This document shows, one piece after another, positions 10,157 to 32,567 of a DNA stretch of 33,212 nt. The number at the start of each line of letters is the position of its first letter. Position 1 is the first letter of the stretch. Origin of the DNA: Bigelowiella natans CCMP2755 (lineage: Eukaryota > Protista > Cercozoa); the NCBI GenBank assembly GCA_000320545.1, contig ADNK01003478.1, forward strand, positions 1-33,212, given 5' to 3'. A program made the translations under genes and the position numbers. The notes beneath the pieces are model-generated. The model saw only the letters and a program-made list of their open reading frames with translations, ran no database searches and was not told the DNA's origin.

Positions 10157-10453
10157 GTTAGGGATGTAGAGTAAATGGAGTTAGTCTGTGTTGAGTCGTC
10201 TGTCCGAAAATCTGGCACTAGATTTCCCGCTGAATGCATACTTTAGTCACTGTGAAACGAACACAAATGCTGTCAATTACTACTATCACTATGGACCTGT
10301 GCTGCTGTTAGGGATATAGAGTTAAGTCTATGTTGAGTCGTCTGTCCGAAAATTTGGCACTAGATTTCCCGCTGAATACATACTTTAGTCACTGTGAAAC
10401 GAACACAAATACTGTCGATTACTACCATCACTATGGACCTGTGCTGCTGTTAG
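10157..10453 (+). repeat. Two-copy imperfect direct tandem repeat, unit about 142-150 bp
   Basis: GTTAGGGAT(G/A)TAGAG at 10157 and 10307. TTGAGTCGTCTGTCCGAAAAT(C/T)TGGCACTAGATTTCCCGCTGAAT...ATGGACCTGTGCTGCTGTTAG starts at 10191 and 10333, with a few substitutions and one small indel. Confidence 0.92.
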
Positions 10454-21878: not shown

Positions 21879-22518
21879 CAAGAAGAGATCGATGACTCCA
21901 GTATTGGCTTTGATCTGATCCTCTCGCACGCACACCTGGTTATGGTAAACGGGTTGATCCGCTTGTTGCTGATGGATGGATGATGTCAACACCTACTCGT
22001 GTTCTGCGCAACACGTATACCTTCAATGAACTTTATCTTATAGCCCTCCTTCACAAATCACCTCGCAGAGGAAAAGGTGAGCGACGTTTGATCGTAGTAT
22101 TATCCCAGTTCCCCCCTGTACTGGCGTTCGCGATATATTTTCACTCAAAGATCATTGTCGCACCACCGAAATACAGACATCTTAAAAGATCGGCTCAGAA
22201 GAAAGAGATAGAATCAGTCTGTTTTTTCAAACTTTTCGAAAAGAAACGCTGTGGAAAACACATCCCTTTTTTGTGCGTGAGACTGACGACCATGGTGTCG
22301 AATTAGGAAAATATGGCACCGTTTACGGTCTGGTGGAAAGATCGGGCAATCATTTTGAATCTTAAATCCGGCAACAGAAAAGGTTGCAGACGATTTAGAG
22401 AAGCAAGATGAAGAAAGTGCAACATCACTTCTCAAACGAACGCAACAAGGGATATCGAGTATCATCGTATTCCAAACAACTTTAGAAATACTTCTCGAAT
22501 CTATCGTCGAGGTAGAGA

Positions 22519-24897
22519 ATGACTGAAGCACGCATCGAGAGTATCTACGGTGAGCTTAAGGAGCTCTCTGTCGACGCGGAAGGACACCATTCAAGAATCT
22601 TGGAACGGCTCTGTGAGCTGGATGGAATGAGTATTTCCGCAAGGACTCTTGGAGAAACGATGATACCAAAAAAACTAAAAGGGTTACAGAAACTTTGGGC
22701 GGGGAAATTGAAGAGTAAAGCGCTCAAGCTAAGAGCAAAGTGGAAGAAGATATTTAGAGGCGGAGAGGAGAATGACGATTCAAAGAATATCGGAAGGTAT
22801 TTTATCAAAGTTGATCGAGTAGGTAGGTCGAATAAGAAATCGCTTCAGCTGACGTCTCCTGCAACACTGAAACTTGGGGGTCTCTGGGGGAAATCACTGA
22901 TTACATACAAGGGTCAGACCTATAAGCTCAGTGTACTTAAATCGCTAATGCAGAAGGCCTTGAGGCAGAACCATCGATCGTTCTCTTTATCGGTTAAAAT
23001 CATAGTAGAAGCGACGAAGTCGTACATGCAGGAAAATCGTAATCTCGAAAAGAAAGATCTTACTAAAGTCAAAAGCATATTGACGAATGTGGTGAACCGC
23101 TTATTGGTTATGGGTGTGGAGGAGGGCTCATTACTAATGCTAGTCGAGGAAGATAGGGCCAAGTTGGTGAAGGCATTTAAAAGGGCAAAAGGACTCTCAA
23201 TTAAAAAGATATCTTGGTCACTTTTGGAGCCATTGTGCTCTCTCCTAGAGAGGTGCGGGCCCATCCACTGTCGTGTGGTGTCTTACGTGTGGGCGCTCAC
23301 ACGCATCATCTCTCGATTCAAGACACACCCAAAGCACGTTGCGGCAGCTCTTGTGCAGTGCAAAGCTTCTTCGAGTCTCGTAAGTCGGCTTAGAACGCTA
23401 GCTCAAGAGACAAGGCTGCCCGAGTTTAACGAATTCTTGGAGGGGAGAGCACACTCTCTGGCTGGACTGGTGTCGCGATCGATTAGAGACTTTATAAACA
23501 TCGTCCCCAAGAATGCTGAATTCGGGAAGCGAAAGATGCAGTTTACAGGCGCAAGGCTTGCTTTGCGTTTCAAGCATGTATTTGGTGCGCAGCACATGTT
23601 ACCACCATCACCAGGTGACACACATGATGACGATAAGGAAGATAACCTTCCTACCCAAGAGGAATTGCAGGAAATGGGCGTAATCGATAGACACTGTGGT
23701 GGGAAAAGATCGAAGCATTTCTTTGCGGTGAAAGGAGCAAGGACACCTCATCTTCTGAAACATATCAGAGAAACAATATTGACCTTTTCCGAGAGGGCGA
23801 GGTTTACTCTTGACGAGCTCGAGACGGTATATATTGCTGAGAAGTTGAGCTTTGAGGTTGAACCAGAAGCTGAGTCAGGCGAAAAGGAAAACGTGAATGA
23901 AGAGACCTTACATGAAAAGGAAAGAGGTTTCGATGGCAAGCACATGGAAGTTGAGAAGTACCAGGGTAGGGGAGAGGATAAGAATGAGAAAAGGCAAGAT
24001 ATCATATCGACTGAAGCATTTCAGCAGCTTGGATTTAAAGGGTGGACTCTCCGAGTAGACACCAAAATGGTTCGGGGCCACAATGCGCAATTTGATGAAC
24101 ATATCCTTGACAAATTAGACAGCAGTCTTCCTCTCTTCTTCCTGAGACACGAGACGAATAAAGAACTAAAAACTCTTCATGAAATTCTTCGTGAAATGGT
24201 CAGTATTCCGAAATTACAAACCGTAGTGTCACTATCTAGAAAAGAGTGGGAGCCTATTAACTCCTTTCTCCAGTGCCACGCTCTTGCTTCAAGTCGTTAC
24301 AAAGACAAAGTTCTCAAGTCAACATCAAATCATACCAATCGCTCAGAAAGCCATTACATATTCTTGCAAGAGTTTATCTCTCAGATGACTAAGTTTTCAA
24401 AGTTACCGGACAAGCTTTTGCAATCTCGGGGGCCATTGATAGGGAAGCAGCTCCTTGAGCACTGTGTAGTGAATTATCTCCTGCCGCTGACAGACTTCAA
24501 TGGGACGAATTTAGGATTTGATTCTGCTTCGGGAATGACAATAAGATACGATTTGATGATCGAAAATAACATTAGTAAAGGGTTGAACACAAGAAAAAGA
24601 AAAGGTTTTGCAACTGCACAAGGCTGGAGCAAAAGATTTCGTGATCTCATAGGGAAAGCTATTCTGAAAAATGAGACGTTAGTGCTGGAAACATGTGAGC
24701 GTGTCTTCAAGGTTTTGGAAGCGAGGGCGGACAAGGACGATTCGTCTTGCCCGCTTTCAAGTCGTTTCCTGAGCTTTGCTCGTTCGACAGAACTCGGGAA
24801 AATGTTTGAGAAGAACAGATCTACCGAGCAGAGGGATGTAGCTGTGAAGGCAGCAAATGATTGCGCAGGAACCCTGCTTAAAAGAATGTCGTCCTGA
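22519..24897 (+). CDS. Intronless 792-aa hypothetical protein: TFIIS N-terminal-like helical bundle, MgsA-C-like helical region, and divergent kinase-like C-terminus
   Basis: Uninterrupted 2379-nt ATG-to-TGA ORF with ordinary globular amino-acid composition and no microsatellites. N-terminal ILERLCELDGMSISARTLGETMIPKKLKGLQK...KALKLRAKWKKIF fits the TFIIS-N/Med26 pattern. Internal motifs are LKSLMQKALRQ, NVVNRLLVMGVEE, IDRHCGG..FFAVKGA and TDFNGTNLGFD..IRYD. Domain assignments come from motif recognition only. Confidence 0.85.
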   Translation: MTEARIESIYGELKELSVDAEGHHSRILERLCELDGMSISARTLGETMIPKKLKGLQKLWAGKLKSKALKLRAKWKKIFRGGEENDDSKNIGRYFIKVDRVGRSNKKSLQLTSPATLKLGGLWGKSLITYKGQTYKLSVLKSLMQKALRQNHRSFSLSVKIIVEATKSYMQENRNLEKKDLTKVKSILTNVVNRLLVMGVEEGSLLMLVEEDRAKLVKAFKRAKGLSIKKISWSLLEPLCSLLERCGPIHCRVVSYVWALTRIISRFKTHPKHVAAALVQCKASSSLVSRLRTLAQETRLPEFNEFLEGRAHSLAGLVSRSIRDFINIVPKNAEFGKRKMQFTGARLALRFKHVFGAQHMLPPSPGDTHDDDKEDNLPTQEELQEMGVIDRHCGGKRSKHFFAVKGARTPHLLKHIRETILTFSERARFTLDELETVYIAEKLSFEVEPEAESGEKENVNEETLHEKERGFDGKHMEVEKYQGRGEDKNEKRQDIISTEAFQQLGFKGWTLRVDTKMVRGHNAQFDEHILDKLDSSLPLFFLRHETNKELKTLHEILREMVSIPKLQTVVSLSRKEWEPINSFLQCHALASSRYKDKVLKSTSNHTNRSESHYIFLQEFISQMTKFSKLPDKLLQSRGPLIGKQLLEHCVVNYLLPLTDFNGTNLGFDSASGMTIRYDLMIENNISKGLNTRKRKGFATAQGWSKRFRDLIGKAILKNETLVLETCERVFKVLEARADKDDSSCPLSSRFLSFARSTELGKMFEKNRSTEQRDVAVKAANDCAGTLLKRMSS

Positions 24898-26222
24898 TGC
24901 ATTACGCTTTGAATGAAATGATTACTTTTTAATTGACATCGCTCAGATTTCTGACCACCAGTGACACACATCTGTAGCTATGTGACATGTACTAATCGTT
25001 AAGCGCAAACACAGCTCTTGTGATGGTGCACGCATCATCCGCACTAGTCGTCTAGGTGTTGTGGTGAGAATATGATGAGAAAGTACATCAAGGCGTGTTC
25101 ATGTTGGTTGTGTGAGCATGCTATGCAAGTAAATATTTGAGTAGCTGGAGGCTAGTATGACACGGATGTAATGAATGAATTCAATCTTTTCAATGGTTAT
25201 CCTAATGTAGCGACGCAAAGCAGCGTGGCTATAACTACTGTGGAGCGCTAATAATCGTAGACAGATACAATTGATTTTGTGACTAGTGTTTGTTGTTCGA
25301 TTCGTACGTACGTACATCACTGAGCTAGCTATAGGCCTGTGACGCTGTCATCTCAATGCTACCTTGAACATAGGACCTTTTCGTGCGCACTATAGCACAT
25401 GCCATTTGTTTATGCTAGTAATGGCGCTATGATGCTATGCTAGCGCGCATTGATGACACATGTGCGTGACACGCTAGCATGCACGCGCGGCGCGTGGGCA
25501 TCGACGCACGAATAAGCGAGCATCGAATACAGCATAGCGCACGTGGGCTCAAGCGTATGAGACGGATTGTGTGTAAGCGATGCAATAAAATCCTATCAGT
25601 AGTCTAATAATCATGCATGCTCGATGTATGTTCATCGGGCAGGGCGAACCGTTTGCGAGCGCGTAGGTGAGATGCCTACCTAGCTACCCCCTAGCACAAA
25701 ACACAATGCATGCCGACAAGTCGATCCTGTGACTACGTACGTATGACATTCAGTAGCTGTTGCCGATATCTATAGATATGCATACCCACTCGCACGCTTG
25801 CCACGCATTGGTACGCTTTGCTGGCATCGTATTTTATTGCTAGCGATATTAGCAAATAGCTAGTAGCTGCACAGTCATCTTCAAAACGACGATGAAGTTG
25901 TGCACATTGCATTAAACAATACGTCCAGACATGTGAGGAAAGTTCTATTGAGCAGCAAAGATCATACCCGACGTTTCACTTCATATGTAGAGACACAGAA
26001 TACATGTTTTGTGCCTATTCTTACGACTTAATTTGTGTTCATATTGCCCCACGCTTCGCTCAGCCATGATAGCATTATCTATTACCAGAACTTTTCATGA
26101 CTTTTTAGGCGTCCATTACTAATGTACTATTTGTATTCTGGCGACAGGAGCTGTATCACTCGGTGGGAAAATTTTATGAATTTTGGCAACATTTCTGCAA
26201 CATCATGCCAAGCGATAGGTCT

Positions 26223-29200
26223 TCATATTTCCCTGCCAGCTCTCTGGTCAAACATGCGTAGCACTGGATTAAATATCAAAGGCTTTCGTCGATCCCTTCC
26301 CCTGACAGCTCTGAGGAAATTCACTCGCCCCGTAGTCGAAGTACTCTCCCTGGTACTTGAACCCTCAGTGGCCACACACACATCCACACAGCGCATCAGA
26401 GTGCGGAGTTGGTGTGAGAGCAGCATGTCCTTTTCCTCTCCATCATTCCTCCTTCCTCCTCCTCCTCCTCCTCCTCCTCCATCCTGGCTCTTCAAGGAGG
26501 ACGAAGCAGGATTTGCGGAAGCACAGTGGTGATTGACTTCAGCCTCAATGTGGGTTAAGAAGTTGCGATATGGTTTGGCCTTGGATAAGGCGAGAGCTTT
26601 AAGCGCACTCTTATGCGAGTATTTCTTTACAATATCAGGGAGCATGTTGGTTGCTACGTTCTCCATCATCCTGCTGCTACTACTACTACTACTACTACCG
26701 CCTAACCCCTTCAACACACCAACTACAAATCGTGGCTTGTCGCTGGGATACGTCACTGGAATGGCGACGACGAAACACACCTGCACACTTCCACTGTTAG
26801 CAGAGACAACGCCTTTTGCGTACATCTTGATGCCCTCGCGACTCAGTGGCGCAAATGAGCCTCTGAGCTTCTCAAATAGCCCGAGTGCGTCTGCTTCCGT
26901 GATGGGTGCCTGGAATTTGATCAGCTTAGAACGGATCATCGGGGGGGGAGGGCCGTTTTGGTTGTGGGTCTCTTGCTGCTGCATGCTCGGTGGAAGCTGC
27001 CATCTTATCAGCATCTTGATCTGTTTGCCTAGAGATATATGAGCTCTCACTCGGTTGCAAAGCCGCGATAGAACGCCCCGGAGATTCACAAGAGTGGGCC
27101 CTCTCGCTTTGTTATCATTGTTGTTATCATCCGTGCTAATGCTGCTGCGGTTGCTACTACTACTACACAGGGCTTGTACCCAGTCATAAGCTTTACTGCC
27201 AGGGTATGCTGCTACTACTGATGATGGTGGAGATGAGGATGATGACGATGATGCTGCACAAATGGGATTGCTATTCTCCGCGTCCTCCCCCCTTCCACTA
27301 TCATCACCTCCACTGCTGTTTGAGGGTTTTGGAAGCTCTGGAAAGAGGCCAGAAAGGATGGCTGAATCAAGCGCTCCGCTCTTTGTTTTCAACCAGGAAT
27401 AGACGACAACCCTGTCCTTCTTCTTAGAAGAGGAGGGAGAGGAGGAGGAGGATATCTCTGTTTCCCCTCCTCCTCCTCCTCCTCCTCCTCCTCCTCCTTC
27501 CCCTTCTTCTTCAGCTGCAAAGCTCAGAGCGAGCTGTTCTCCATGGCATGCAATATCCATCGATAGGATGATGATTCGTCTCTTTTTTCCTTCTTTTTCT
27601 CCTCCTCCTCCTCCTCCTCCTCCTCCTCCTCCTCTGCTATCATCTTTCTCTTGTTCCCTGCTGCCCTCTTCCACATCTTCCATCATCTCTCCCTCCTCCG
27701 GCTCCTCTCCTTCCTCCAATTCAGACCTCCTCATATCGTCCTCACCGCTGTCCAACACTCCCCCTCTCCGCTGCTTATTCGATGTTGATGACGGTGAGGT
27801 AGAAATGCCACTAGGGGTCATAGCAGCGACACGTAGCTGTTTCAATGGTTTGGTATATATGTGCATAAGGGATATGGCGGCTTTATAAAGGCGTGCAAGG
27901 GGGGCGGGCAGAACTGAAACGGGCTCTCCCTGCACCGAGAGGCCTTGGAACTCTGGCGGCAGCAGGTCTCGCACCATATGGCAATCCTGAACAAACATTA
28001 GGCCAACAACAACAACATGATGATGATGATGATGACGATGATGGAAAATAGCGTGATATCTTCGGATATAACTAAAGAATGTTTACGTCGCGACGAAGAA
28101 TGAAAATGAGACAAAAACCAGCAGCGACTTTATATCCATGAGCGTTTCAAGTTGCGGGTAGATATATAATCGGTTGCTGGTGGTATAAAAGAACTACCTG
28201 ATACAACTCTCGGATTTGCTGACCAAGCCCATCAAGAAACCTACGCTTTGCCGTATTCTCCTTACGAATGGCCTGGTTTTCCTCTCCCAGCTGCTTAAGC
28301 TCTCCAAGCAACTGCTTCCTTTTCCCCAATTCCGCTCTCAGAAGGGCAAGCTCCATCTCGTGGCTTTTCTTTTCGTAGCGTGACGCAGCTTCAGGGTCTT
28401 GAAGAAGGAACTCGTCCATGGAGAGGAGGTTGGTGGGCGCTTTGAACCGGAAAGCACGACAGCTAGCGATCAGTTTGCGTAAATGCGTCTGATGGAGGAT
28501 GATGATGATTAAACATTAATTTTGCCAAAAAGAGAGAAGAAGAAGAAAAATGTCAGCATGAAGAATAAACACTTTGAGGGAGGGGGGGCAAACCACCACA
28601 CATCGAGATACATCGCCACAACGGAGGCAGATGCAAGGAAAACGACGATCTGCTCAATGACTCTCGTATCACCACCATGACTGAAGAGAGAAAGAGAGGG
28701 GGGAGGGGTTAGGAAAATGTACTCGTTCGTATGCAAGACTCTGCAGGAAAAGGTTGAGATCATCCAGAGCTCGATTCTACGTTACGATAAATGATAGCGA
28801 TACAAATCATGATGAGGACAGAAGTTAATCAATGAGAGGGGGAGGAGGAGGAGGAGGAGGAGAAGAAGAAGAAGAAGAAGAAGAAGAAAAAGACATTCCT
28901 ATGATGATGCTGCTATGATCACCCATTCAATTACTACAAACATTCATTATCCTCGTCCTCATATTCATCATCATCTTCATAATTATTATTATTATTATTG
29001 TCGTTATATTCTCAGCAAAACCTTATCTTGAGTCGAATGTTTGACCTTCTCCGTAAGGAGAGTGAGGGTTCGATTGAGCTGCTTCAACTCCAAGAAATAC
29101 ATCATCGCCTCTGTTTCTTTCCTGTGTTGGGGGGGGGAGGTTTCAGGTCAATGAAAACTGGGAGCTTCGGAGAGCTCGACGAAATGTAAGACGTGTGTAA

Positions 29201-31080: not shown

Positions 31081-32567
31081 CATTTGTACGTTATTAGTTA
31101 AAATGTCCTCTGTACAGACGCTACGGCACCTTTTTCGATGAGGAGATCGATCAAATGACTCTGAAAGTACGAGGCCTCACTTATTACAGCCGAAGTAGCA
31201 CTTCTTGCCTCAACTCGGTAAAGGCAGATCATAATATGTTAATGAGTTTTGTGGAATTGGTGATGTTGCTCCGCCGCTGCTCGCATACCTACGATCGACA
31301 TAGCCAGATTCTATTAATTTTTTCATACAGCTGCTACTACTATCGTTCTTACTCTATAATTACTGCTATAATTTCACTACATTAAATCTGTTCTAATCAT
31401 CATCATCATCATCATCATAATCATCATCATCATTCACCAGTGTTTCGGGGGCGGGAATCCATCTCGGAAACTCCTCAAGAATATTAACGCCACCCTCAGG
31501 CCAAACCAAATGGTACCTTCTCTCCATCGTTAGCACTGCCATCATCGTCAATCATTGTTGCCAGCACCAAAAGTCATCATCGTCGTTTTCATTGATATTT
31601 TTGTCGCTATATTCCATCATGTAATGTGATTTGAATGTCCTTGTCAAGGTGGGGCTCATGGGTCCCTCTGGGGCGGGAAAGTCTACGTTTCTGAGGGTAC
31701 TGACAGGGAGAGCGGATGGAGTCATTGAGGTGAGTAAGTATGTCATCGTTATCATCCTGCATCATTATACATCACTTGTTGTCGTCAGCATCATTCCTCT
31801 CATCATTCTTCTCATCACCATCATCATCATCATCATCTTCATCATCAACATTATCGTCATCTTTCTTCGCCCTCAGGGAAAACTCGAATTAAACGGTCAA
31901 GATCTACGCGGCAAATGGGAACGTATGGCGATGATCTCCAAGTTTCTTCCTGCTGAAGACGTTCTGTACCAAGGCTTTACGCCGATGCAACTCCTATCGT
32001 AAGCAACCGACATCATTCCATTCATCATCATCAAAAACACCAGTAGCGACCGACAACAAAAACCAAATTCCATTGTAGTATCATCCGGCTCATCATTTTG
32101 TAGAATAATACTCGTTTTTGTGAGGATCACGATGGAAAATTTCTCGATTTCTCTATATTCAGCATCATCTTCATCTTCATGACGTGACAGTGGATCTCTC
32201 CCCCCCCCACCCCACCCCCCCCCCTCTTAATAGCTACGCTGCCTGCCTGAGACTAAGATGTAGCGAGGCGCAGAGACAACGACGAATTGGGCTGTTGATC
32301 CGTGAGCTCGGCCTGGAGAAATGCAAAAACACTGCTATTACCACCAGCAGCCACAGCTTGTCGACAGGAGAGCGAAAGCGCGTTATGATAGCTTTGGAGC
32401 TGCTCACAAATCCGAATTTCTTGCTGCTTGATGAGCCATGTTCAGGCTTAGACTCTAGGAATGCGGAGAATACGATGACGCTTCTCAGAGATATAGCACG
32501 GAATAAGCGTACAGTAGTGGTTTCCATCCATCAGCCCTCCATCAGTATATTTGAGAAGGTTAGATTA

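What the first reader, a model, noticed from the sequence alone, without database searches (positions are those of the whole stretch)
22519..24897. Intronless 792-aa ORF with a TFIIS-N-like domain fused to a giant-virus-like helical plus kinase-like module
Seen: this is the only long single-exon gene in a window where the other six genes have 5-21 introns, and about 21.8-25 kb lacks the microsatellites found elsewhere. Established: the N-terminal ~78 aa match the TFIIS-N/Med26/IWS1 helical bundle pattern (L..L..M.IS...L.ET.I.K.L..L.K.....A..L..KWK), a docking domain of Pol II elongation factors. Inference: KSLMQKALRQ (22939), NRLLVMGVEE (23095) and DRHCGG..F..KGA (23686) resemble the KS.LQK.IRR / NRL.VI..ED / D.HT..G....F...GA pattern of MgsA-C-like proteins I recall from nucleocytoplasmic large DNA viruses. 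DFNGTN..IRYD (24493-24552) resembles a D-x-x-x-x-N catalytic loop plus metal-binding Asp of atypical kinases. The hypothesis is a domesticated viral gene that gained a host transcription-elongation docking domain, potentially an undescribed Pol II-associated kinase or pseudokinase.
Basis: partly seen in the sequence, partly recalled or inferred. Interest (0 to 1): 0.8.

Follow-up and report, generated by a model that had tools for sequence, protein, structure and literature searches.

The report
Virus-type kinase-like gene with TFIIS-N domain
An expressed, intron-free gene of the alga Bigelowiella natans joins a transcription-factor docking domain to a two-part module (an unclassified helical domain plus an atypical kinase-like domain) whose relatives are mostly in giant-virus genomes, so it is probably a virus-related gene put to work in the host nucleus.

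Summary
The 792-aa ORF (22519-24897, +) is real. It is identical or nearly identical to Bigelowiella natans gene model 91880. Four transcriptome contigs match window 22435-24957 without gaps and carry a poly(A) tail, so the gene is expressed and unspliced.

It has three confidently modelled domains:
- **Residues 1-83:** a five-helix TFIIS-N-like bundle. It falls below the Pfam cut-off here but above it in the Chlorarachnion reptans orthologue, which also hits the solved Med26 N-terminal domain.
- **Residues 108-450:** a helical domain with no Pfam or PDB relative. The "MgsA-C" label is not supported.
- **Residues 495-792:** a protein-kinase-like fold. All 50 best PDB fold matches are kinases. 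D659, N664 and D678 are invariant, but the strand-3 Lys position is Arg here.

That superfamily gave 47 IMG/VR loci, most of them named giant-virus MAGs, plus a few bacteria. Full-length fold matches are giant-virus proteins (best E 2.8e-8).

Only the two chlorarachniophyte proteins carry the TFIIS-N domain. A giant-virus-linked origin is likely, but the direction of transfer is unproven and the function is inferred. This is a new variant of a known kind, of moderate to high interest.

The parts
22435..24957 (+). Transcribed region: unspliced mRNA with about 84 nt of 5'UTR and about 60 nt of 3'UTR, poly(A) added after 24957
   Evidence: L007-L010 (four B. natans transcriptome assemblies) align ungapped at 99.76-100% identity. 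The contigs end in A-runs that are absent from the genome.
22519..24897 (+). Coding sequence, 792 aa plus stop; equals B. natans JGI model 91880 apart from the model's different 3' end
22519..22767 (+). Residues 1-83: TFIIS N-terminal-like (TND) five-helix bundle
   Evidence: Model helices 2-17, 20-36, 41-47, 49-57 and 63-84, pLDDT about 87. PF08711 E 0.0065 and 16.7 bits, below the 20.6 cut-off. TIGR01385 TFSII N-terminal part E 0.0072. TFIIS N-terminal domain 8h6r E 0.11. Orthologue: PF08711 26.6 bits, and Med26 N-terminal domain 5odd E 2.8e-4.
22768..22839 (+). Residues 84-107: disordered linker, absent from the C. reptans orthologue
   Evidence: pLDDT below 50; gap in alignment A1
22840..23868 (+). 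Residues 108-450: mainly helical domain of an unnamed superfamily (giant-virus MAGs, some bacteria); no solved or curated relative
   Evidence: Domain model pLDDT 88.4, pTM 0.88. Best PDB fold match E 0.77. hhalign against the giant-virus N-domain alignment: probability 97.4%, E 1.4e-11. hhalign against the long two-domain forms: 97.3%, E 2.6e-11.
22939..23124 (+). Residues 141-202: motif blocks 1 and 2 (KSLMQKALRQ ... NRLLVMGVEE), the strongest link to the superfamily
   Evidence: HMM positions 64-135 correspond to window residues 135-205. They are matched by about 50 metagenome or bacterial proteins and by giant-virus ORFs. Ser, Gln, Lys, Arg / Asn, Arg, Glu are invariant in alignments A5 and A6.
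23686..23694 (+). Residues 390-392 (D-R-H): motif block 3; the Asp and His are invariant across the superfamily
   Evidence: A secondary matched stretch at HMM 319-352 corresponds to residues 387-417.
23869..24000 (+). Residues 451-494: disordered acidic/basic linker
   Evidence: pLDDT 25-35; variable in length among relatives
24001..24894 (+). Residues 495-792: protein-kinase-like (PKL) domain
   Evidence: All 50 best PDB fold matches are kinases: actin-fragmin kinase 1cja E 1.4e-3, then PI3K, GAK, PI4KII-alpha and Pan3, with probability 0.57-1.0 and mostly >=0.9. The order of secondary-structure elements fits a small sheet lobe followed by a helical lobe.
24145..24147 (+). Residue R543: the strand-3 position that is Lys in 9 of 11 relatives and Arg only in the two chlorarachniophytes
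24493..24552 (+). Residues 659-678: putative catalytic loop (D659, N661, N664) and metal-binding Asp (D678)
   Evidence: D659, N661, N664, G666, D678 and L679 are each present in 11 of 11 sequences. They lie after the long helix 631-654, around strands 665-668 and 673-676.
24604..24621 (+). Residues 696-701 (GFATAQ): invariant segment 18 residues after D678, role unknown
   Evidence: G696, T699, A700 and Q701 are each 11 of 11

Best explanation
The gene is a host-resident, expressed, intron-free gene of chlorarachniophyte algae with three parts.

**What is shown**
- The N-terminal TFIIS-N-like bundle belongs to a domain type that reads short disordered motifs in RNA polymerase II elongation factors.
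- After a flexible linker comes a two-domain module: an unclassified helical domain with invariant polar residues, followed by an atypical protein-kinase-like domain.
- This module belongs to an unnamed superfamily found mainly in giant-virus genomes and in a few bacteria.

**What is inferred**
- An ancestor of Bigelowiella and Chlorarachnion obtained the module by gene transfer involving giant viruses and fused it to a host-type docking domain.
- The docking domain tethers the module to the Pol II elongation machinery.
- There the kinase-like domain, which keeps the catalytic Asp/Asn and the metal-binding Asp, either phosphorylates a nearby substrate or acts as a nucleotide-binding pseudokinase scaffold, because the strand-3 Lys is Arg.
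For: - **Expression and lack of introns:**
- **Orthologue with the same three-part architecture in C. reptans:** 47% identity.
- **Docking domain:**. Its role as a reader of disordered motifs in elongation factors comes from PMC9987994.
- **Kinase-like fold and invariant D659/N664/D678:**
- **Rarity of close relatives:** an exhaustive search of 1.84 billion representative proteins found only 12 relatives, and none outside the chlorarachniophytes has the N-terminal domain.
- **Link to giant viruses:**
  - Full-length fold matches to giant-virus proteins of 620-730 aa, including Cedratvirus, Pithovirus and a Megaviridae sample, best E 2.8e-8.
  - 47 IMG/VR loci carry the helical domain, most of them named GVMAG.
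  - The family HMM hits giant-virus ORFs directly at E 3e-8 to 1e-5.
  - Profile-profile probability is 97.4%.
  - Contig L005 (27% G+C) carries this subfamily's kinase-like domain next to a helical-domain ORF that is 42% identical to GVMAG proteins.
- **Precedent:** giant-virus DNA is already known in B. natans, with 35 putative viral regions reported in PMC7909515 (also PMC13196603).
Against: - No exact motif match or close relative of the subfamily was found in IMG/VR.
- The kinase-like domains of the subfamily and of the giant-virus proteins are alike only weakly at sequence level (hhalign E 1.5e-3, probability 17%).
- The gene's composition matches the host, and its neighbours look like host genes.
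- One relative comes from a eukaryotic proteome (P0007). L002 carries a eukaryote-style membrane thioredoxin gene.
- Bacterial members exist, so the direction and source of transfer are not settled.
- No Pfam kinase family is matched.
- R543 replaces the usual Lys.
- No tool here tests binding or catalysis.
- The models rest on alignments of only 11-14 sequences.
Confidence: 0.55

Rival explanations
1. The family is an old cellular (eukaryotic or bacterial) gene family that giant viruses captured. On this reading the chlorarachniophyte gene is inherited vertically, or came from another cell, and is not of viral origin.
For: - Orthologues occur in two chlorarachniophyte genera, with host-like composition.
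- P0007 comes from a eukaryotic proteome.
- L002 (58% G+C) carries a gene for a thioredoxin protein with a signal peptide and a membrane anchor, typical of cells.
- The superfamily sits in bacterial chromosomes such as Desulfosarcina widdelii, and beside IMPDH and DAHP synthase genes in L018.
Against: - Only 12 relatives were found among 1.84 billion representatives, so the subfamily is absent from nearly all sequenced eukaryotes.
- The gene lacks introns in a genome whose neighbouring genes are fragmented.
- The helical domain is far more common in giant-virus MAGs.
- In the neighbour-joining tree a 27% G+C virus-like contig groups at 100% support with 55-58% G+C contigs, which indicates repeated exchange rather than vertical descent.
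Confidence: 0.25
2. The C-terminal domain is a catalytically dead pseudokinase, and the protein is only a scaffold tethered to transcription factors.
For: - The strand-3 position is Arg in both chlorarachniophytes but Lys in 9 of 11 relatives.
- No glycine-rich loop was recognisable.
- Pan3, a pseudokinase, is among the fold matches.
Against: - D659, N661, N664, D678 and the GFATAQ segment are invariant across sequences that share only 21-45% identity.
- K507, which lies in the first hairpin, is also invariant and could supply the missing Lys.
Confidence: 0.3
3. The kinase-like domain acts on a small molecule or lipid, as PI3K/PI4K or aminoglycoside-type kinases do, and has nothing to do with Pol II. 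The weak N-terminal match would then be a generic helical bundle.
For: - PI3K, PI4KII-alpha and actin-fragmin kinase lead the fold matches.
- One giant-virus relative has a weak PI3_PI4_kinase hit at E 0.011.
- The window's own TND score is below the Pfam cut-off.
Against: - The orthologue passes the Pfam cut-off and hits the solved Med26 N-terminal domain.
- The window's best PDB and NCBIfam hits are TFIIS itself.
- Fold-match E-values (1e-3 to 1e-2) do not separate lipid kinases from protein kinases.
Confidence: 0.15

Closest known systems
Uncharacterised two-domain proteins of giant viruses (BFVD models A0A142CK76, A0A0M4JK29, A0A8T9VLA2, A0A5J6VNI2 from a Megaviridae environmental sample, A0A285PWU0 from Cedratvirus lausannensis; IMG/VR GVMAG ORFs in L020-L066)
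   Same: - Same order of domains, a helical domain followed by a C-terminal domain of about 250-300 aa, with total size 600-750 aa.
- Invariant Ser/Gln/Lys/Arg, Asn/Arg/Glu and Asp/His positions in the helical domain.
- A D-x4-N pattern followed by a later Asp in the C-terminal domain.
   Different: - None has the TFIIS-N domain.
- Identity is only 11-29%.
- The C-terminal domains match at sequence level only weakly (E 1.5e-3).
- None has a known function.
Atypical protein-kinase-like enzymes: actin-fragmin kinase (PDB 1cja), PI3K/PI4K catalytic domains, PI4KII-alpha
   Same: The predicted fold, and a catalytic Asp/Asn pair five residues apart followed 14 residues later by an Asp.
   Different: - No sequence-level match to any Pfam kinase family.
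- Arg at the strand-3 Lys position.
- An invariant GFATAQ segment with no known counterpart.
- Preceded by a helical domain that has no solved relative.
TND-containing transcription factors (TFIIS, Med26, IWS1, Elongin A, PNUTS/PPP1R10)
   Same: An N-terminal five-helix bundle matching PF08711, the Med26 N-terminal domain and the TFIIS N-terminal domain. PNUTS is the nearest analogy in logic, because its TND brings PP1 phosphatase to elongation factors (PMC9987994).
   Different: - Here the TND is fused in one polypeptide to a kinase-like domain.
- The review describes the TND as having no enzymatic activity of its own, and the passages I retrieved from it mention no fusion to a kinase-like domain.
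- The window's own score is below the Pfam cut-off.
Giant-virus-derived insertions in the B. natans genome (Blanc et al. 2015, cited in PMC13196603; 35 putative viral regions in PMC7909515)
   Same: A virus-related, intron-free gene in the same nuclear genome.
   Different: - This is a single gene among host-type genes, not part of a multi-gene viral block.
- It has host-like composition and is transcribed and polyadenylated.
- It is shared with C. reptans and fused to a host-type domain.
   Same: Both are helical domains.
   Different: PF12002 gave no hit in the window protein, its 13 relatives, 17 long-form relatives or 28 giant-virus relatives. There was also no MgsA hit in PDB profile searches or the fold search, and no AAA+ ATPase domain lies upstream.

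Membership tests
TFIIS N-terminal domain (TND; Pfam PF08711 Med26) | Score above the Pfam gathering cut-off (20.6 bits) | tested here: inconclusive
   The window protein scores 13.2 bits full-length and 16.7 bits for residues 1-100, so it does not pass. The C. reptans orthologue, aligned along the whole domain, scores 26.6 bits and does pass.
TFIIS N-terminal domain (TND; Pfam PF08711 Med26) | Five-helix bundle | tested here: met
   The model has five helices in residues 2-84 with pLDDT 82-90. PMC9987994 defines the TND as a five-helical bundle.
TFIIS N-terminal domain (TND; Pfam PF08711 Med26) | Sequence similarity to solved TNDs | tested here: met
   The orthologue hits the Med26 N-terminal domain (5odd E 2.8e-4, 6zv3, 8t1i, 7emf). 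The window hits the TFIIS N-terminal domain 8h6r at E 0.11 as its best hit, and TIGR01385 at E 0.0072.
TFIIS N-terminal domain (TND; Pfam PF08711 Med26) | Binding of TND-interacting motifs through a basic patch and two hydrophobic pockets | not testable with these tools
Protein-kinase-like (PKL) superfamily | Bilobal kinase fold | tested here: met
   All 50 best Foldseek PDB matches are kinases or pseudokinases, with probability 0.57-1.0 (mostly >=0.9) and best E 1.4e-3. Many viral Ser/Thr kinases appear among the BFVD matches. E-values are modest, and the query was the whole protein.
Protein-kinase-like (PKL) superfamily | Catalytic-loop Asp and Asn five residues apart, plus a metal-binding Asp about 13-14 residues later | tested here: met
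   D659, N664 and D678 are each present in 11 of 11 sequences. They are located after helix 631-654 and around strands 665-676.
Protein-kinase-like (PKL) superfamily | ATP-anchoring Lys in strand 3 | tested here: not met
   Position 543 is Arg in the window protein and in C. reptans, and Lys in 9 of 11 relatives. The invariant K507 in the first hairpin may substitute, but this was not tested.
Protein-kinase-like (PKL) superfamily | Match to a curated kinase sequence family (Pkinase, PI3_PI4_kinase, APH and others) | tested here: not met
   No Pfam hit at E<=1 for residues 488-792. There is one chance-level PI3_PI4_kinase hit (E 0.011) among 28 giant-virus relatives.
MgsA_C (PF12002) | Pfam match, or sequence or fold similarity to solved MgsA/WRNIP1 C-terminal domains | tested here: not met
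   No Pfam match. The only PDB profile hit for alignment A2 was a ferritin, and A5 gave none. The best fold match was E 0.77 to citrate synthase. A profile-profile test against PF12002 could not be run.
MgsA_C (PF12002) | Position downstream of an AAA+ ATPase domain | tested here: not met
   Only the TND and a disordered linker precede the domain.
Unnamed helical-domain superfamily of giant viruses and bacteria (alignments A5, A6) | Profile-level homology of the helical domain | tested here: met
   hhalign gives probability 97.4% with E 1.4e-11 against giant-virus N-domains, and 97.3% with E 2.6e-11 against the long forms. The family HMM hits giant-virus ORFs at E 3e-8.
Unnamed helical-domain superfamily of giant viruses and bacteria (alignments A5, A6) | Invariant polar positions in three blocks (Ser-Gln-Lys-Arg; Asn-Arg-Glu; Asp-x-His) | tested here: met
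   The window protein has S142, Q145, K146 and R149; N190/N193, R194 and E201/E202; and D390 and H392. The superfamily's invariant Tyr is Ala in the window protein.
Endogenous giant-virus element (multi-gene insertion) | Flanking viral genes or hallmark genes | tested here: not met
   The flanks hold a THOC5-like ORF, pieces of an ABC-transporter gene and fragmented ORFs. No viral family was found.
Endogenous giant-virus element (multi-gene insertion) | Composition different from the host | tested here: not met
   The ORF is 44.8% G+C and the window 45.1%.

The most novel reading that the evidence does not exclude
A chlorarachniophyte ancestor captured a giant-virus two-domain protein (a helical domain of unknown fold class plus an atypical kinase) and fused it to a TFIIS-N docking domain. 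This would create a Pol II elongation-complex kinase of viral origin, a transcription-associated kinase class with no counterpart in animals, fungi or plants. The same analysis would give the first functional handle on a superfamily present in dozens of giant-virus genomes.
Probability: 0.25. Interest if true: 0.8.

Novelty: new variant of a known kind. Interest (0 to 1): 0.6.

Why it matters
**An unannotated superfamily.** The work defines a two-domain superfamily with no Pfam, NCBIfam, PADLOC or PDB entry. It is widespread in giant-virus metagenome-assembled genomes and present in some bacteria. Its helical domain carries a dozen invariant polar residues, which suggests an active or ligand-binding site.

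**A new domain combination.** The algal gene is the only known case in which this module is fused to a domain of known role, the TFIIS-N docking domain. That gives a testable clue that the viral proteins may also act on transcription machinery. In the passages retrieved from the TND review, no TND is described as joined to a kinase-like domain.

**A case of gene capture.** It is an example of a virus-related gene retained, expressed and remodelled in a host already known to carry giant-virus DNA and to be infected by giant viruses.

Tried and rejected
**Searches that found nothing**
- PDB sequence searches with the protein and with the family profile gave nothing except a chance ferritin hit at E 0.0019 over helical residues.
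- NCBIfam and PADLOC gave nothing for the wider family.
- IMG/VR scans with the close subfamily (alignment A3, P0020, neighbour genes, and a degenerate DNA pattern for the catalytic-loop motif) found no relatives.
- The JGI metagenome scan found none, and four pattern matches there were chance.
- The word-index protein search with alignment A3 returned only the two chlorarachniophyte proteins and missed known members, so it was uninformative.
- GenBank phages gave no match.
- The 2015 paper on B. natans provirophages is not held. The diurnal-expression paper has no supplements held.
- The bacterial-type promoter and terminator scan was at chance level and irrelevant for a eukaryotic gene.

**Ideas rejected**
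- A contaminant or gene-model artefact: transcripts and flanking host-type genes rule it out.
- Part of a multi-gene viral insertion: no viral neighbours were found.
- MgsA_C membership: every test run was negative.
- The D-R-H block at residues 390-392 as a PI3K-type catalytic loop: it lies in the helical domain, far from the kinase-like lobes.

**Left unresolved**
- Whether contigs L001-L004 and L006 are viral or from compact eukaryotic genomes.
- Weak single Pfam hits to AAA+ lid or clamp-loader C-terminal families among giant-virus relatives (E 0.0065-0.12). These are at chance level.

Full report
**Observation**

The window holds an ORF at 22519..24897 (+) of 792 aa. The quoted motifs are at the stated places: residues 141, 193, 390 and 659-678. 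Tandem Repeats Finder finds no microsatellite between 21672 and 26434 apart from one weak row inside the ORF. This is the longest such gap in the window.

The protein equals Bigelowiella natans JGI model 91880 except for the model's different 3' end, and it equals a 792-aa transcript product apart from two substitutions. The window is therefore B. natans nuclear DNA.

Four transcriptome contigs align without any gap to 22435-24957 at 99.76-100% identity and end in poly(A). The gene is expressed and unspliced, with a 5'UTR of about 84 nt and a 3'UTR of about 60 nt. Its G+C equals that of the window.

- There is another long ORF of 591 aa at 26223-27998 (-). It has a weak THOC5 match and long Gly/Ser runs and is probably one large exon.
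- The intron counts of the neighbours and the 'Canopy-like' gene were not verified. I saw only fragmented ORFs and an ABC-transporter domain split over ORF pieces.

**Relatives**

An exhaustive HMMER search of 1.84 billion representative proteins found only 12 relatives. The only full-length one is from Chlorarachnion reptans (P0002, 753 aa, 47% identity). It shares the N-terminal domain but lacks the first linker. All the others match only residues of about 121-765 and come from metagenomes or from one eukaryotic proteome.

Their contigs are gene-dense and intron-free.
- L001 (52% G+C) carries two tandem Rpb5_C-like genes plus RINGv, UCH, DUF4326 and DUF5654 genes.
- L003 carries a 3'-5' exonuclease gene.
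- L002 (58% G+C) carries a thioredoxin gene with a signal peptide and a membrane anchor.
- L005 (27% G+C) carries a truncated HSP70 gene and a DUF4326 gene.
- L006 carries ORFans.

Their origin, virus or compact eukaryote, is not settled except that L005 looks like a giant virus (see 'The wider superfamily').

**Domain 1 (residues 1-83)**

Pfam Med26/PF08711 scores 13.2-16.7 bits, below the 20.6 cut-off. The orthologue scores 26.6 bits and hits the solved Med26 N-terminal domain at E 2.8e-4. [quoted passage not shown] The AlphaFold2 model has five helices with pLDDT of about 87, as the TND is defined in PMC9987994. I accept a TND-like domain for the orthologous pair.

**Domain 2 (residues 108-450)**

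Modelled alone, this domain reaches pLDDT 88.4 and pTM 0.88. Foldseek finds nothing in the PDB (best E 0.77, probability 0.04). Neither Pfam nor PDB profile searches find MgsA_C or anything else. A profile-profile test against PF12002 could not be run.

**Domain 3 (residues 495-792)**

With the full model as query, all 50 best PDB matches are kinases or pseudokinases. Actin-fragmin kinase leads at E 1.4e-3, followed by PI3K, GAK, PI4KII-alpha and Pan3. The order of secondary-structure elements fits a small sheet lobe, a long helix (631-654), then two short hairpins.

In 11 sequences, D659, N661, N664, G666, D678 and L679 are invariant. So are F506 and K507, and G696, T699, A700 and Q701. The strand-3 position 543 is Lys in nine sequences and Arg in the two chlorarachniophytes. 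No Pfam kinase family is matched. I rate a kinase-like fold as likely, at about 0.85. Catalytic competence remains open.

**The wider superfamily**

On L005 the kinase-like ORF (1613-2410) is directly preceded by a 463-aa ORF in another frame (195-1586). These are either two genes or one broken gene. The N-terminus of the upstream ORF aligns to motif blocks 1 and 2 of domain 2 (hhalign E 1.2e-4).

A search with that ORF returned 81 proteins, none with a Pfam domain. They comprise stand-alone forms of about 400 aa and two-domain forms of 650-790 aa. They include chromosomal genes of Desulfosarcina widdelii, where the gene sits among RadC, Mrr and DUF1848 genes, and of an AT-rich marine bacterial assembly.

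Profile-profile comparison links domain 2 to their N-domain at probability 97.3%, E 2.6e-11.

An IMG/VR scan with these proteins found 47 loci, most on contigs named GVMAG or on viral contigs of 100-730 kb, with ORFs of 600-990 aa.
- The family HMM of the window protein hits such giant-virus ORFs directly at E 3e-8 to 1e-5.
- hhalign against their N-domains gives probability 97.4%, E 1.4e-11.

The invariant positions of the superfamily fall there: Ser, Gln, Lys, Arg; Asn, Arg, Glu; and Asp, His.

The C-terminal domains of the bacterial and viral forms also carry an invariant Asp, then Asn five residues later, then a later Asp. They align to the window's catalytic loop only weakly (E 1.5e-3 and 3.3e-4).

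Independently, the full model's best BFVD matches are giant-virus proteins of 620-730 aa aligned over about 760-850 columns. They include Cedratvirus, Pithovirus and a Megaviridae sample, with best E 2.8e-8.

L005's upstream ORF is 42% identical to GVMAG proteins. This places the window's kinase-like subfamily in a giant-virus-like genome. GenBank phages have no member.

**Origin**

In a neighbour-joining tree of the kinase-like domain, the two chlorarachniophytes form a clade (100% support) among the metagenomic lineages. The 27% G+C contig groups at 100% support with the 55-58% G+C contigs, which points to exchange between very different genomes.

B. natans is known to carry giant-virus DNA and to be a host lineage of giant viruses (PMC7909515; PMC13196603). 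Several observations fit a transfer involving giant viruses, followed by fusion to a host-type docking domain before Bigelowiella and Chlorarachnion diverged:
- the lack of introns;
- the rarity of the subfamily in eukaryotes;
- the abundance of the helical domain in giant viruses.

Several observations count against certainty:
- host-like composition and host-type neighbours;
- a relative from a eukaryotic proteome and bacterial members of the superfamily;
- no close relative in IMG/VR.

The gene is not part of a multi-gene viral insertion.

**How it most likely works (inferred)**

The TND docks on disordered motifs of elongation factors. Two disordered linkers (residues 84-107 and 451-494) give reach. 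The kinase-like domain acts on, or binds, something nearby. The closest analogy in logic is PNUTS, whose TND brings PP1 phosphatase to the same factors. The invariant polar residues of domain 2 suggest that it has a binding or catalytic site of its own.

**Limits**

- The models rest on alignments of 11-14 sequences.
- Fold E-values for the kinase match are modest.
- No library of predicted cellular structures was available.
- The tree is neighbour-joining with midpoint rooting.
- No binding or activity was tested.

While weighing the MgsA_C comparison I recalled part of that family's motif from memory in my reasoning, against the brief.

**Verdict**

It is unsupported on the MgsA_C name. Viral domestication and function remain unproven. 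I class this as a new variant of a known kind, with interest 0.6.

Noticed in passing
window 10178-10453: Tandem duplication of a 142-bp unit (2.0 copies, 94% matches), much longer than the microsatellites that fill the rest of the window.
   Followed up: no
window 26223-27998 (-): A 591-aa ORF with long poly-Gly and poly-Ser runs and a weak FmiP_Thoc5 match (E 0.064). It is probably a large exon of a THOC5-like gene convergent with the finding's gene.
   Followed up: partly
window 31631-32567 (+): An ABC-transporter ATPase domain split over at least two ORF pieces, which indicates an intron-containing ABC gene.
   Followed up: partly
L001 5658-8103 (-): Two tandem, divergent Rpb5_C-like genes lie next to RINGv, UCH, DUF4326 and DUF5654 genes on the contig that carries the closest non-chlorarachniophyte relative. 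The set looks giant-virus-like at 52% G+C.
   Followed up: partly
L001 135-716 and L005 2867-3235: A DUF4326 gene lies within about 2 kb of the family gene on two unrelated contigs (52% and 27% G+C). This may be a conserved neighbourhood. It was not seen near the giant-virus MAG relatives.
   Followed up: partly
L005 195-2410 (+): The helical-domain ORF and the kinase-like ORF are adjacent but in different frames. The helical part is of the giant-virus MAG type (42% identity), while the kinase-like part belongs to the window's subfamily, closest to the 58% G+C contig L002.
   Followed up: partly
L015 (Desulfosarcina widdelii AP021875.1, 2071356-2089503): A bacterial member of the superfamily (DSCW_19790) sits among RadC, Mrr_cat, CpXC and DUF1848 genes, a neighbourhood that looks like an island or mobile element.
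   Followed up: no
L006 3223-4641 and proteins P0011, P0012: Some relatives carry only the helical domain and others (P0013, P0014) only the kinase-like domain, so the two domains also occur apart. Short contigs may explain some of these cases.
   Followed up: partly
Alignment A6 (giant-virus MAG ORFs): Single chance-level Pfam hits among 28 giant-virus relatives: PI3_PI4_kinase (E 0.011), Rep_fac_C (0.01), AAA_lid_TANC1 (0.0065) and RuvB_C (0.12). Their positions in the proteins were not located.
   Followed up: no
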